Notes under the pieces: generated by a model
Told to the model about the DNA's origin: nothing
Seen by the model: the letters and a program-made list of their open reading frames with translations, nothing else
Database searches by the model: none
Part shown: positions 37,550-62,402 of the stretch, in pieces
Position numbering within the stretch: the stretch's first letter is position 1
How the letters are laid out: each line of letters opens with the position of its first letter
Translations under genes and position numbers: made by a program
Source of the DNA: Diadema antillarum
Lineage: Eukaryota
Length of the DNA: 64,000 nt
Assembly: GCF_040938485.1 (NCBI RefSeq)
Contig: NW_027270963.1
Span: forward strand, 2,232,001-2,296,000
Reading direction: 5' to 3'

Positions 37550-37909
37550 ATGGGATCTGGTAGCAGTTCACACGGGTCTGCCTCCAGCCGGCGGAGCGTC
37601 GGGAGCAATGAGAGTAGGACGACAAATCCAGTCGCCCCTGTCTCCATTACTGTCACCGTCACTGACGAGACCGGCCTGAGACCGAGTCACGAATGGACCG
37701 ACAAATACTTCAGCAACCTGCCCGCCAGCGATCCTTACAGCGACGACGATCTCGAGACTGTGCTCGACGATGATATGGACGCTCGTTCCGTGGTCGGGGA
37801 AGAAATGGGAGCTTCCCCCGTGATCCCAACAAAGATGCTGCACGCACACATGGCAAAGCCATTCCACTCCAAACTTCAACCATTGCAAATACATGGAGTA
37901 GATTTTCAC
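37550..37909 (+). CDS. TGM: Transglutaminase TG-A exon 1 (MGSGSSS..., disordered N-terminal tail into the beta-sandwich)
   Basis: ATG at 37550, 120 codons, donor CAC|gtgagt in phase 0. Ends LQIHGVDFH, matching the start of the TGase N-terminal domain. Confidence 0.85.
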
Positions 37910-39564
37910 GTGAGTATGATCAACTGTCACTCCTTCCAAAGAATCATTCGAAGCTAATTTTCTATAGGCACAGTTTCTCCCTCTTGCACAAGTGAATGTA
38001 TAATCGGGCTTGAAAGAGTTGGATAGGCGCTTTAAGGATCTATGGCAACAGAGTGTGTCCCGCACATGCCACAGGTTAATGATTTATTCATAGACTCCAC
38101 GGTGCATGCCGTGTGCGTTGCGATACGGAATCTGCCATTTGCTGCCAAGCTTGCACAATTAAATTGCATCATATCCATAACATCGGATGTAGATTGACAT
38201 GTTCGTTCGTCCCCCGTGAGTACAAGAGAGGAGCTAAGCAATCTGTAGTGGAGAGTCACTTCAGAGCCCTATCGGATATACGTACATGAATTAGATACAT
38301 TCGAGATATCGTCATATAATTTTTCTGGTCAGAACATTAATGTTAGCACTGCTTTTCAAAGAGGATTTTGTGTTGCCTTTGGTGGTACCCCCAACAACGT
38401 GAGGTAGCCATTCTTACTATTGGGCCGAAGGGTACATGGTAGATAATAACGCATCATCCAAGGCTGTAAGCAACTGACATGATGCGCCCTTAGATCCTCC
38501 TACACGAAAGTCTGGACTCTTCTCCGCTTTTCCAAGAATGCCCCCTATATCAAGTCTTGAATTGGTATGCTGACTCCATGTCGCGAGAGCAGACATATAG
38601 TAGCTACATATTCTTCAATTTAGCCCGTATTCACATTCATACATGTATATAATGCTCTCATCCTTCCCGCCAGTCCCCTCCCCCTCCCCTATACAGACGA
38701 ATTTTCCAATTTCTTTTGCTGAATCGAGATTTTCCTTACGCTATGACATTGACAGAAAACACGCGGCTCATCAGGAGATGGATAATTATCATAAACACGG
38801 TGAAGGGTAGACTTGAGAGTAAGGCAGCGCAAACGATTCTCGCAATCAATTGCTAGTGTGTCTTCTGGCCCTTCTGTATCTATGACAACCGGCTTACGCT
38901 TACATCATACATACACGATTTTCCAAATGGCAGACGAAATGAAGAGCTGCACATAACATTAACTTGCTTTCATCCGAGTCAAGGGCAGGTGCAGTATGAA
39001 ATCGAACGTCGAAGCAAATCACCATCCATGAATTAGATTTCACTGAGTTACGAATGACTGATAAATGGGAACGGATATAATGTTTGATGCGTGGTGTAAC
39101 AGCTTGATGCACTCACAGGGCTGCTTGTTGACTTTTTTCCCGTCCCTGACTTTCTTTTCTAGGAAACTATAGGTATGTTTTAAAGACCTGAAGAAGGAGG
39201 AAAAACTGGTCCTTGTGAATGTTAACTGTAAACCTCGATGATGATGCGCATTGCATCTTTCATGAGCTTAACTTTGAATTAATGAGAAAATAGAATGTAA
39301 TATTCAAAGGAATTGCTGCCAGAGTGAATAGGTTTGTGAGCCAACATTTAAAATTGTCGACAGCTGTATAATTGCAAACAATAAGCAGGAATTTTGGGAG
39401 AGAACCAGCATAGGGACGAGTGTTGTGGTAAGTATTTTAAATCAGTGTCTTCTTGAAATAAAGGTGTTAACTTCGGAGGCACTGAAGAACAGATGCGATT
39501 CTTGAGCAGTAGTGTGGATAGATACGAATCAGTGATATCATTTCGAGAGACGGACTCGACTTAA

Positions 39565-39937
39565 AGGTACACGGACCCAGCATCCGAAAGAGGGCGCTGT
39601 TGAACGGCATGACGATTACCGCCATCTTCATTACGACGATCGACGATGTAAAGCTAGCTATCTGCCGCGGTTATCTGTCAGTCAAAGTAGATAGTGTGTT
39701 TTCACGCAAGTTTCCACGAATATCTTGCAAGAAAACTTTATCTTTGAAGGATCCGTAAGTAGTAGGCGGAACCAGTCAGGAACAAAGGCCGAATGAAGAG
39801 CCGAGCTGAGATTCGCATTATTTCGAACATTTTCTACATTACTCATAATCGGCTTTATTCGGATTTCTGGAACATGGTAGACGCAAAAGCGTGGGTCCAT
39901 GCAACAGCGCCCTATGGAATCCTGGGCCTGTGTCCTT
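39565..39937. mobile_element. Kolobok-like MITE in TG-A intron 1
   Basis: TTAA|AGGTACACGGACCCAGCATCC...AGGGCGCTGTTG at the left end versus CAACAGCGCCCT...GGAATCCTGGGCCTGTGTCCT...TTAA at the right end: about 40-bp imperfect TIR with TTAA flanks. Confidence 0.7.
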
Positions 39938-40075
39938 TTAACTTTAATTGATAGTTCTCTCTTTGATCGGAAGTGTTCATTTTAAATGTTTGATATTTAA
40001 AACGATTAAAGACACAAAGTAAAACGATTCAACATCACGTCGAGTTTTCATTGGCTAATATTTATTCATGAACAG

Positions 40076-61039: not shown

Positions 61040-61070
<31 letters not shown>

Positions 61071-61895
61071 TGGGGGGGGGGGTTACCACTACCACTGCCT
61101 ATGGAGGCATGCGGGCATTTGGCCCCTCAAACCAAAAAAAAAAAAAAAACAAAAAAAAAAAAAACAAAGTCCTTACAAGAGAATCCCCTACCGATGTGAT
61201 CACGGGAATCATGGGCGAACTGCAGGGGTTCCACAATCGTAATCTTTGTTGTGCACGCTTGACCACTGGATCACAAATCGGCCTTAGGAACCTTCCCCTG
61301 CTTTCTTTAGGAGCACATACTGTGTGCTTGCAGATGACTAATCACGTGAGATCTAAGATGCCCATGCTACCCAGTGCCTGGTCTGGAGGAACCCGCAAGG
61401 GACATAAGTGAAGAATATGGTTATCATTTGCTAGCTTGTGCTCGGGACCGCCACTGTGTTAAATCGTATGGGATCATAAAAGGCCAACGCAATCCCATGC
61501 ATAATTTTGAAGGGGCCATTATACGAAGCCAGAATAAATCCCCGAGTCAAAGAAGTAGTTTCCAATAACAAGAATAACAAAATGATCCCCACATGACTAC
61601 AATACAATCGCATTGAGGCCCGCATGCACTTGACCAATCGTAAAAAGAAATTTGCTTTGTTCATTTGCTAAAATGAAACTCTTCGTAAGAGCGAGAAAGA
61701 CATCTTTAGTGTAAATTTACAGTGCGTTTAAGAGCGTTGAGTCACACTCCTAATTGATATCAAGGGGGAGTGGATTTGTGTAGAATGTTTTGGAAACTGT
61801 TAAAGCTATTTGTATTTATGACAAGATTTCTTTCGTTCTTACTGAACATGTCTATTTTTTCAGCATCTCTGTCCTCTGGTTGTTCTTTTCACAGA

Positions 61896-62402
61896 ATGGG
61901 ATCTGGATCTAGCAAAGGAGGGGCGGCTCCTAGTAAGCCCAATGAGCACCCAACTGCTCCCGCAAACACGGGCTCAGGGGCGAATTCTCGACAACCGCCA
62001 GCCGCCGCGTCTTCCGGGGCCACTGGTGGATCAGGCGCAACCAACAACGGCTGGTATTGGTTCGAGATCTATTTCAGTAACCAACCGCAGCCGCCAGCCC
62101 TGGAGGAGGAGGATGATAACGATGACGATGACGATGAGACACCGAGTGGGAACACTGACGGAAACTCGAACCAGCCACCTGTCAGCGGTTCATCGGAAGA
62201 CGCTCCCGCGGCTTCAATCGATACCCCTGCAGACGCTTCAACTACTGCTCCGGCAGAAGCCGCTGGAGAAACTCCCGCGGAGAACCCAGCTGCACCTCCA
62301 GAACCGACCCCCGCGAGTGAACCAGCGCCCTCTCAGCCAGCGCCATCGGCTCCTCCGCGACCAACGCTGCCGTCTCTCAAGGTCACCGATGTGGGCCTAA
62401 AT
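61896..62402 (+). CDS. TGM: Transglutaminase TG-B first coding exon (MGSGSSK..., long Pro/Ala/acidic tail)
   Basis: An acceptor ttttcacag|A just before the ATG implies an upstream 5'UTR exon. 169 codons, donor AAT|gtaaga in phase 0. Ends LKVTDVGLN, equivalent to LQIHGVDFH of TG-A. Confidence 0.85.

What the first reader, a model, noticed from the sequence alone, without database searches (positions are those of the whole stretch)
37550..62130. Shared hidden motif in the disordered N-terminal tails of both transglutaminase paralogs: W-x-[DE]-x-YFSN-x-P plus an acidic tract, behind MGSGSS
The tails (about 110 aa in TG-A, about 160 aa in TG-B) cannot otherwise be aligned, yet both keep three things in the same order. 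First, MGSGSS, which fits the MGxxxS N-myristoylation consensus. Second, WTDKYFSNLP (37694-37723) versus WFEIYFSNQP (62058-62087). Third, an Asp/Glu run (DDDLETVLDDD versus EEEDDNDDDDDE). Conservation of an aromatic island inside fast-evolving low-complexity sequence points to a functional short linear motif. It might be an autoinhibitory activation-peptide-like latch (by analogy to factor XIII-A), a membrane or partner docking site, or a protease-release signal (by analogy to membrane-anchored TGM1). I do not recognise it as a described motif.
Basis: partly seen in the sequence, partly recalled or inferred. Interest (0 to 1): 0.7.

Follow-up and report, generated by a model that had tools for sequence, protein, structure and literature searches.

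The report
Conserved motif in urchin transglutaminase tails
Two neighbouring sea-urchin (Diadema antillarum) transglutaminase genes carry floppy N-terminal tails that share a lipid-attachment start signal, a short tryptophan-centred aromatic patch and an acidic run. These features are kept in other sea-urchin genera, so the patch is probably a real lineage-specific docking or membrane-contact signal whose partner is still unknown.

Summary
The window is Diadema antillarum. TG-A (37550-49152, 9 exons) is exactly XP_071484958.1. TG-B (from 61358/61896, running off the window) matches the first 259 residues of XP_071484960.1. The assembly gaps lie between the two genes and touch no exon.

Both tails start MGSGSS and carry W-x-[DE]-x-YFSN-x-P followed by an acidic run. 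Synonymous codons differ between the two copies, so the match is conservation at the protein level, not recent gene conversion.

Orthologues keep the element in looser form: W-x3-[YWNS]-[FI] followed by net charge -8 to -13 (D. setosum, Lytechinus pictus and variegatus, Strongylocentrotus purpuratus, two unlabelled contigs). The strict YFSN form occurs only in Diadema and in one unlabelled TG-A contig.

A profile of the tails found only these proteins among 1.84 billion representatives. The clade is echinoid-only.

AlphaFold2 leaves both tails disordered, with a single short helix exactly on the motif. There is no confident docking on the core, so the factor XIII-like latch idea has no support.

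My best reading is a myristoyl-only membrane or export tail, in the manner of Drosophila TG-A and TGM1, with the aromatic-acidic island as the second contact. The mechanism is inferred. No RNA evidence was available. The scan had not noted this before.

The parts
37550..37909 (+). TG-A exon 1: the whole N-terminal tail (residues 1-108, predicted disordered) plus the first beta strand of the Transglut_N domain.
   Evidence: Exact match to P0085 residues 1-120, with a GT donor at 37910. pLDDT is below 50 for residues 1-108.
37550..37570 (+). TG-A N-myristoylation-type start, MGSGSSS (Gly2, Ser6, no Cys nearby).
   Evidence: M1, G2, G4 and S6 are invariant in the eight-tail alignment.
37640..37792 (+). 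Block conserved among TG-A orthologues (VSITVTV ... DARSV), which contains the island and the acidic run.
   Evidence: Alignment A3 of five TG-A tails has 35 invariant columns. Coordinates.
37694..37723 (+). TG-A aromatic island WTDKYFSNLP. The only helix predicted in the tail, residues 48-54, sits here.
37742..37774 (+). TG-A acidic run DDDLETVLDDD. The 25 residues after the island have net charge -8.
40076..49152 (+). TG-A exons 2-9, encoding the transglutaminase body. Active-site GQCW is at 41194, and the Cys380-His437-Asp460 columns are invariant.
61358..61407 (+). TG-B 5' exon segment with an upstream ATG. It is in frame in D. antillarum (adding 17 codons) and out of frame in D. setosum because of a 5-base indel.
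61895..62402 (+). TG-B tail exon. An acceptor AG sits just before it, MGSGSS starts at 61896, the tail is about 157 disordered residues, and the exon ends with the first beta strand LPSLKVTDVGLN.
62049..62087 (+). TG-B aromatic island GWYWFEIYFSNQP. The only helix predicted in the tail of the D. setosum orthologue, residues 54-61, sits here.
62103..62138 (+). TG-B acidic run EEEDDNDDDDDE. The 25 residues after the island have net charge -12.
63075..63246 (+). TG-B next coding exon, in the Transglut_N domain.
   Evidence: Pfam PF00868, E 1.2e-11. Exact match to P0212.
63954..64000 (+). Start of the following TG-B exon, cut by the window end.

Best explanation
TG-A and TG-B are tandem members of a transglutaminase clade found only in sea urchins. 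Their N-terminal extensions are homologous, intrinsically disordered and have no signal peptide.

The shared architecture, in order:
- M-G-[ST]-G-[ST]-S, an N-myristoylation signal without any cysteine for palmitate.
- A neutral to weakly basic stretch rich in Ser, Gly and Arg.
- A helix-prone aromatic island, general form W-x3-[YWNS]-[FI], probably ancestrally W-x-[DE]-x-YFSN-x-P.
- A strongly acidic run.
- A variable spacer.
- The first beta strand of the enzyme.

Shown here: common descent of the island, its retention under purifying selection, its restriction to echinoids, and the lack of any confident fold or docking.

Inferred: the tail acts as a membrane, cortex or leaderless-export module, as in Drosophila TG-A and human TGM1. 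Myristate alone gives only a weak anchor. The aromatic island would supply the second contact, either by inserting at the bilayer interface or by binding a trafficking or cortical partner as a short helix. The adjacent acidic run would tune that contact by charge, calcium or phosphorylation.
For: Identity of the genes.

Orthologous tails with the island and acidic run:
- D. setosum TG-A and TG-B.
- Lytechinus pictus and variegatus TG-A (EWTETYFNNQP) and TG-C (EWLRNWINSLP).
- S. purpuratus TG-B (GWEWFEINF).
- L. pictus TG-B, read from locus L001.
- Unlabelled contigs P0210 and P0211, the latter with QWTEVYFSNQP.

Conservation and selection:
- The tryptophan is invariant in the eight-tail alignment.
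- Profile-profile alignment of the tails picks out only the island, E 0.0043.
- Codons for YFSN and the proline differ synonymously between TG-A and TG-B (TAC/TAT, AGC/AGT, CCC/CCG).
- D. antillarum versus D. setosum TG-B: the tail has dN/dS of about 0.27, and the island plus acidic block has 0 nonsynonymous and 4 synonymous changes.

Distribution:
- The tail profile finds only 4 representatives among 1.84 billion proteins.
- The clade holds only echinoid rows, with SH-aLRT 100.

Structure and chemistry:
- Both AlphaFold2 models give a disordered tail whose only helix lies on the island.
- In all 12 tails scored, the most interface-seeking 8-mer overlaps the island, the next 25 residues have net charge -8 to -13, and no cysteine is conserved.
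- No signal-peptide-like hydrophobic core is present.

Precedents:
- 33 of 120 full-length relatives fit the myristoylation pattern. The arthropod and most of the mollusc ones carry Cys3 or Cys4; the ambulacrarian ones carry none.
- Drosophila TG-A is secreted through exosomes with two fatty acylations (title cited).
- A calcium-dependent transglutaminase activity exists at the sea-urchin egg surface.
Against: - Nothing here shows myristoylation, membrane binding, secretion or any partner.
- The acidic run next to the island should repel anionic membranes.
- Interface propensity of the island is strong only in Diadema TG-B (-6.1 kcal/mol). It is modest elsewhere, about -0.8 to -2.8.
- The island's sequence varies a good deal between lineages, so a single conserved partner pocket is not guaranteed.
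- The NCBI model of TG-B in this genome starts upstream of MGSGSS.
- L. variegatus TG-A is annotated as MMGSG.
- No RNA runs were listed, so splicing and start sites rest on gene models and conservation.
- The selection test on the island is weak: I estimate about P 0.02, from very few changes.
Confidence: 0.45

Rival explanations
1. Autoinhibitory latch or pro-peptide. The island, as a short helix, docks on the catalytic core or the dimer interface and keeps the enzyme silent until calcium or proteolysis releases it, as the factor XIII-A activation peptide does.
For: The element is helix-prone and conserved. Transglutaminases with N-terminal regulatory peptides exist (factor XIII-A, from established knowledge). 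The egg-surface activity is transient and calcium-dependent.
Against: Neither AlphaFold2 model gives the tail any confidence (pLDDT 25-47) or a packed conformation. The alignments for the tails are shallow, and I could not inspect contacts. No conserved Arg/Lys cleavage site lies between the island and the first beta strand: DARSV is absent from P0211 and from TG-B. The spacer length varies from about 50 to 120 residues.
Confidence: 0.15
2. Extracellular or substrate-side function. The aromatic-acidic segment binds calcium, basic matrix proteins or the fertilisation-envelope or hyaline scaffold, placing the enzyme on its substrates. Alternatively it is itself a cross-linking handle.
For: A long acidic run is present in every tail. 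Sea-urchin egg-surface transglutaminase acts on the fertilisation envelope.
Against: No conserved Gln or Lys lies in the island: Diadema TG-A has NLP where others have NQP. Nothing ties these particular paralogues to the egg surface. This would not explain the invariant myristoylation-type start.
Confidence: 0.12
3. Protease-release or processing signal, as in membrane-anchored TGM1. The island marks where the anchor is cut off.
For: The tail has the same general layout as the TGM1 anchor region: a lipidated, disordered N-terminal extension. This is by analogy only.
Against: No conserved basic or otherwise recognisable cleavage site lies in or next to the island across the three lineages. Aromatic-acidic sequences are poor matches to common processing proteases.
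Confidence: 0.06
4. No function of its own. The island is leftover paralogue similarity, a chance match in low-complexity sequence, or a by-product of a nucleotide-level signal.
For: The two Diadema tails alone align only weakly (66 of 2000 shuffles reach the score). The exact residues drift between lineages.
Against: The island is kept at the same place in three paralogue lineages and at least four genera, while the surrounding tail cannot be aligned. Changes within it are synonymous only. The tryptophan is invariant in the eight-tail alignment. The strict pattern is expected far less than once per window by chance.
Confidence: 0.07

Closest known systems
Drosophila transglutaminase TG-A N-terminal extension (Shibata et al. 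2017, J Biol Chem 292:10723; title seen, paper not held)
   Same: A leaderless invertebrate transglutaminase with an MG... start. The N-terminal extension carries fatty acylation and directs unconventional export.
   Different: The fly protein uses two acylations, myristate plus palmitate. The urchin tails have no conserved cysteine and instead carry an aromatic island and an acidic run. No sequence similarity between the tails was found.
Human TGM1 membrane-anchorage region
   Same: A lipidated, disordered N-terminal extension of about 100 residues ahead of the beta-sandwich domain, which holds the enzyme on the cytoplasmic face of the membrane.
   Different: TGM1 is anchored through a cysteine cluster (Cys47/48/50/51). 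The urchin tails have none. The tails are not homologous. On the tree the echinoid clade lies among ambulacrarian sequences, apart from the one TGM1 row included.
Factor XIII-A activation peptide
   Same: An N-terminal peptide ahead of the Transglut_N domain that could regulate activity.
   Different: The activation peptide is short, is cut by thrombin and packs on the partner subunit (established knowledge). Here there is no conserved cleavage site and no predicted packing. 'Factor XIII A chain-like' is only NCBI's automatic name for these proteins.
ELM class LIG_deltaCOP1_diTrp_1 (tryptophan-based motifs in acidic surroundings that bind the delta-COP mu-homology domain)
   Same: A tryptophan followed within a few residues by W or F, sitting in a disordered, negatively charged stretch of a cytosolic protein.
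   Different: The resemblance is one of form only. The pattern is loose, the acidic residues here lie mainly on one side, and binding was not tested.
Tail motif of the other echinoderm and hemichordate TGK-like transglutaminases (RRL-x-YEY-x-GRRYDV)
   Same: It follows an MGSG[AS]S-type start in ophiuroid (P0088) and unlabelled (P0094) sequences, and it is also a short conserved island in a disordered tail.
   Different: Basic rather than acidic. There is no significant profile similarity to the echinoid island (hhalign E 0.45).

Membership tests
Animal (papain-like) transglutaminases | Transglut_N, Transglut_core and Transglut_C domains | tested here: met
   TG-A exons hit PF00868 and PF01841 above their cut-offs. 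The isolated exons hit PF00927 only below its cut-off, but the full protein P0085 carries PF00927, PF00868 and PF01841 in the precomputed annotation. TG-B exon hits PF00868 in the window, and the full-length D. setosum gene product has all three domains.
Animal (papain-like) transglutaminases | Catalytic Cys-His-Asp triad present | tested here: met
   C380, H437 and D460 of P0085 and C430, H487 and D510 of P0209 lie in invariant columns. GQCW is at 41194.
N-myristoylated proteins | Gly at position 2 after the initiator Met, a small uncharged residue at position 3, Ser/Thr/Ala/Gly/Cys/Asn at position 6, and no Pro at position 7 | tested here: met
   MGSGSSS and MGSGSSK. The pattern is met by all echinoid-clade tails.
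N-myristoylated proteins | The Met before Gly is the real translation start | tested here: inconclusive
   TG-A has no in-frame upstream ATG in the open frame. The TG-B NCBI model starts 17 codons upstream in this genome, but that ATG is out of frame in D. setosum. No RNA or peptide data.
N-myristoylated proteins | Myristate actually attached | not testable with these tools
   Needs metabolic labelling or mass spectrometry.
Factor XIII-A-type activation peptide | A conserved proteolytic cleavage site, and a peptide that packs against the enzyme | tested here: not met
   No conserved site across lineages. Tails have pLDDT below 50 in both models.
TGM1-type or Drosophila TG-A-type dually acylated anchor | Palmitoylatable cysteine(s) near the N-terminus or in a cluster | tested here: not met
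   No conserved Cys in any of the 12 tails.
ELM LIG_deltaCOP1_diTrp_1 | Trp-based motif surrounded by negative charge, in a disordered region | tested here: inconclusive
   All tails have W followed by W or F within 1-4 residues, with an acidic run beside it. The exact ELM expression was not at hand, and chance matches are likely.
ELM LIG_deltaCOP1_diTrp_1 | Binding to the delta-COP mu-homology domain | not testable with these tools
   Needs a binding assay.

The most novel reading that the evidence does not exclude
The aromatic-acidic island is a previously undescribed, echinoid-specific sorting signal. Together with myristate alone, it would take a leaderless, calcium-activated cross-linking enzyme to the egg or cell cortex and out to the surface. 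It would then be the missing second signal of a new unconventional-export route, and the molecular handle on the classical egg-surface transglutaminase of fertilisation-envelope assembly.
Probability: 0.2. Interest if true: 0.65.

Novelty: new variant of a known kind. Interest (0 to 1): 0.42.

Why it matters
How transglutaminases without signal peptides reach membranes and the outside of cells is still only partly understood. The known solutions use dual lipidation (TGM1, Drosophila TG-A).

The sea-urchin clade keeps the myristoylation start but has no palmitoylation site. In its place it has conserved a short helix-prone aromatic patch beside an acidic run, across several paralogues and genera.

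If that patch is the second localisation signal, it gives a simple, mutable handle. G2A and tryptophan mutants could be used to study the placement and release of cross-linking enzymes in a classical fertilisation and development model.

If it turns out to have no phenotype, the result is still a tidy piece of annotation: a lineage-specific tail architecture in a tandem gene cluster.

Tried and rejected
- **Word search on the TG-A tail** (region 1-125 of P0085) returned only the query. Candidates were restricted to proteins of 0.55-1.75 times the query's 797 residues, so exon-sized fragments were excluded. A blank there means little.
- **RNA evidence.** No RNA run was listed for 37400-41600. 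Splicing rests on gene models.
- **Papers not held.** The Drosophila TG-A paper and Wong & Wessel 2009 could not be read. Only their titles are cited.
- **Deeper origin of the island.** The TG-A tail profile against the tails of other echinoderm and hemichordate transglutaminases gave hhalign E 0.45. Rejected.
- **Known short motifs checked by eye on all lineages.**
  - LC3-interacting [WFY]xx[LIV] with a preceding acidic residue fits Diadema TG-A and camarodont TG-B, but not Lytechinus TG-A, P0211 or TG-C.
  - Kinesin-light-chain W-acidic fits only camarodont TG-B.
  - The AP-2 WxxF-acidic type fits TG-B only loosely.
  - FFAT and phospho-FFAT are not conserved, and the acidic tract is on the wrong side.
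  - The TSG101 PTAP in Diadema TG-B is not conserved.
  - None is kept across the clade, so none is proposed.
- **Recent gene conversion** between TG-A and TG-B as the source of the shared YFSN is rejected, because the synonymous codons differ.
- **Pfam** finds nothing in either tail.
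Full report
**What is in the window**

Both start MGSGSS. WTDKYFSNLP is at 37694-37723 and WFEIYFSNQP at 62058-62087. Each is followed by an Asp/Glu run. In a six-frame scan, the strict pattern occurs only at these two places.

The window is Diadema antillarum. 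The NCBI protein XP_071484958.1 (P0085, 797 aa, 'coagulation factor XIII A chain-like') maps onto the window without a mismatch. It forms nine GT-AG exons from 37550 to 49152. Its exons hit Transglut_N and Transglut_core, and more weakly Transglut_C. The catalytic Cys, His and Asp fall in invariant alignment columns.

TG-B runs off the window. Four pieces, at 61358-61407, 61895-62402, 63075-63246 and 63954-64000, translate exactly to the first 259 residues of XP_071484960.1 (P0212, 873 aa). The 63075 exon hits Transglut_N. Both genes are therefore real, apparently active transglutaminases in tandem on the + strand.

The assembly gaps at 53815-56035 lie in the spacer between the TG-A stop and the TG-B 5' exon. 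They touch no exon, and I left them alone.

**Is the shared motif more than chance?**

The two Diadema tails alone give only weak evidence. Without MGSGSS, their best local alignment is the motif plus the acidic run, and 66 of 2000 shuffles reach that score. Orthologues settle the question. I recovered these tails:

| Lineage | Species or source | Sequence at the island |
|---|---|---|
| TG-A | D. setosum | identical island |
| TG-A | Lytechinus pictus and L. variegatus | EWTETYFNNQPASEPYSDDDLETV |
| TG-A | unlabelled ENA contig (P0211) | QWTEVYFSNQPASDPYGDDDVETVDDDD |
| TG-B | D. setosum (P0209) | identical island |
| TG-B | S. purpuratus (P0208) | GWEWFEINFGTMDLADDSDEDGD |
| TG-B | L. pictus (read from locus L001) | GWEWFEINFSSMELGFDSDDEGD |
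| TG-B | Logan contig (P0210) | GWEWFEISFGTMDLADDSDEDGD |
| TG-C (third Lytechinus paralogue, P0087/P0206) | L. pictus and L. variegatus | EWLRNWINSLPPPEELEEED |

- In the alignment of eight tails, the invariant positions are M1, G2, G4, S6, the tryptophan, one Asp and one Leu of the first beta strand.
- I built profiles of five TG-A and five TG-B tails, with MGSGSS and the beta strand removed. They align only at the island (hhalign E 0.0043 for that single comparison).
- The two Diadema copies use different synonymous codons for Tyr, Ser and Pro in the island. The identity is therefore held at the protein level and is not a recent conversion tract.
- Between D. antillarum and D. setosum, the TG-B tail exon has dN/dS of about 0.27. 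The 31 codons of island plus acidic run carry four synonymous and no nonsynonymous changes. The rest of the exon carries 17 nonsynonymous changes. By my estimate this is about P 0.02, from few events.

**How the pattern should be restated**

The strict YFSN-x-P form is seen in Diadema (both paralogues) and in P0211, and it is probably ancestral. The form common to all is W-x3-[YWNS]-[FI], followed at once by a stretch with net charge -8 to -13. TG-A orthologues conserve a much longer block, about residues 31-81, with 35 invariant columns among five sequences. That tail is therefore not just a ten-residue island in noise.

**Distribution**

- A tree of 33 transglutaminases places TG-A, TG-B and TG-C in one echinoid-only clade (SH-aLRT 100).
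- That clade is sister to the echinoid TGK-like genes, which lack the tail.
- A profile of the eight tails, run against 1.84 billion representative proteins, returned four hits. All belong to this clade.
- L. pictus has at least four clustered genes of this kind. P0084 and P0087 are on the same 15.79 Mb contig.
- The MG-x-x-x-S start is much older and wider. Of 120 full-length relatives, 33 fit the myristoylation pattern. The arthropod and most of the mollusc ones carry Cys at position 3 or 4. The ambulacrarian ones (MGSG[AST]S) carry none.
- Other echinoderm classes have a different, basic tail island (RRL-x-YEY-x-GRRYDV). It shows no profile similarity to the echinoid one.

**Structure**

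AlphaFold2 models were built for TG-A (P0085) and for the D. setosum TG-B (P0209, 95% identical to the window's protein). Each was given an alignment of 44-47 relatives. Both fold the enzyme body with high confidence. Residues 1-108 of TG-A and about 1-156 of TG-B stay below pLDDT 50.

In each tail, the only secondary-structure element is a short helix lying exactly on the island: residues 48-54 (EWTDKYF) in TG-A and 54-61 (YWFEIYFS) in TG-B. Confidence is low and the tail alignments are shallow. The tool gives no contact map, so docking cannot be excluded, but nothing supports it.

The tails have no signal-peptide-like hydrophobic core and no conserved cysteine. In all 12 tails scored, the island is the most interface-seeking 8-mer of the first 150 residues. 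The value is strong only in Diadema TG-B.

**Reading**

Shown here: a homologous, selected, helix-prone aromatic-acidic element, in disordered tails with a myristoylation-type start, belonging to an echinoid-specific transglutaminase clade.

Inferred: the tail is a membrane, cortex or leaderless-export module of the kind known from Drosophila TG-A (exosomal secretion with two fatty acylations; title) and from TGM1 (cysteine-cluster anchor). Myristate alone binds membranes weakly (established knowledge), and the palmitoylation site is missing here. The island is therefore the best candidate for the second contact, either with the bilayer interface or with a protein partner. The acidic run would act as a modulator.

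A calcium-dependent transglutaminase activity at the sea-urchin egg surface has long been known. From memory, Wong and Wessel 2009 cloned urchin transglutaminases in that context. That paper was not held, so I cannot say which paralogue they studied.

The rival readings are an autoinhibitory latch, an extracellular or matrix-binding segment, a processing signal, or no function. Each is weighed in its own section. None is excluded, and the latch and processing readings lack the features that define them.

**Caveats**

- The NCBI model of TG-B in this genome begins at an ATG in a 5' exon (61358), 17 codons upstream of MGSGSS. If that ATG is used, Gly would not be N-terminal.
- In D. setosum the same exon is nearly identical but carries a 5-base insertion. 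That puts the upstream ATG out of frame, and the annotated protein starts at MGSGSS.
- All other orthologues also start there, except L. variegatus TG-A, which is annotated as MMGSG. I therefore take MGSGSS as the start and the upstream ATG as a 5'-leader feature, but this needs data.
- No RNA run was listed. The word search on the tail region was blank for technical reasons.
- A search of the held papers for transglutaminase, myristoyl and sea urchin together returned one unrelated paper. That search covers open-access text only.

**Verdict**

It is too narrow in its pattern, and the latch analogy is unsupported.

The finding is a new variant of a known kind, a lipidated transglutaminase N-terminal extension, with an undescribed lineage-specific element. 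Interest is moderate.

Noticed in passing
window 61300-61410; L005:9440-9600: The TG-B 5' exon with its upstream ATG is almost identical between D. antillarum and D. setosum, while the surrounding upstream DNA is about 78% identical. A 5-base indel changes the frame of the upstream ATG relative to the main start. It may be a conserved upstream reading frame that regulates translation.
   Followed up: partly
window 40576-41469: TG-A encodes residues 172-469, most of the sandwich end and the whole catalytic core, in one 894-base exon. The homologous part of S. purpuratus TG-B is split into four blocks. This suggests intron loss in TG-A.
   Followed up: no
window 63075-63246: Diadema TG-B reads LHFTSEYE (LHYTSEYE in D. 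setosum) where nearly all transglutaminases have HHT-x-EYE. The second His of a nearly invariant pair is replaced.
   Followed up: no
L001:1-140 (- strand), 10001-21113 and 26959-31113: The L. pictus cluster holds at least three tail-bearing transglutaminase genes within 31 kb. One is divergently oriented, encodes 827 aa and starts MGTGTSKGRR followed by a long Gly-rich run. Its island region lies outside the fetched locus.
   Followed up: partly
P0088, P0094, P0091, P0097, P0089 (N-terminal 30-110 residues): Ophiuroid and holothurian TGK-like transglutaminases share a different basic tail island, RRL-x-YEY-x-GRRYDV-[ST]. In P0088 and P0094 it follows an MGSGAS start. It also appears to be undescribed.
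   Followed up: partly
P0087, P0206 (residues 7-45): The Lytechinus TG-C tail between the start and the island is an Arg/Gly-rich, RGG-like stretch (24% Gly, 10% Arg).
   Followed up: no
window 42600-43700: A TG-A intron holds several tandem copies of a roughly 230-base repeat, seen as recurring reading-frame fragments in the ORF listing.
   Followed up: no
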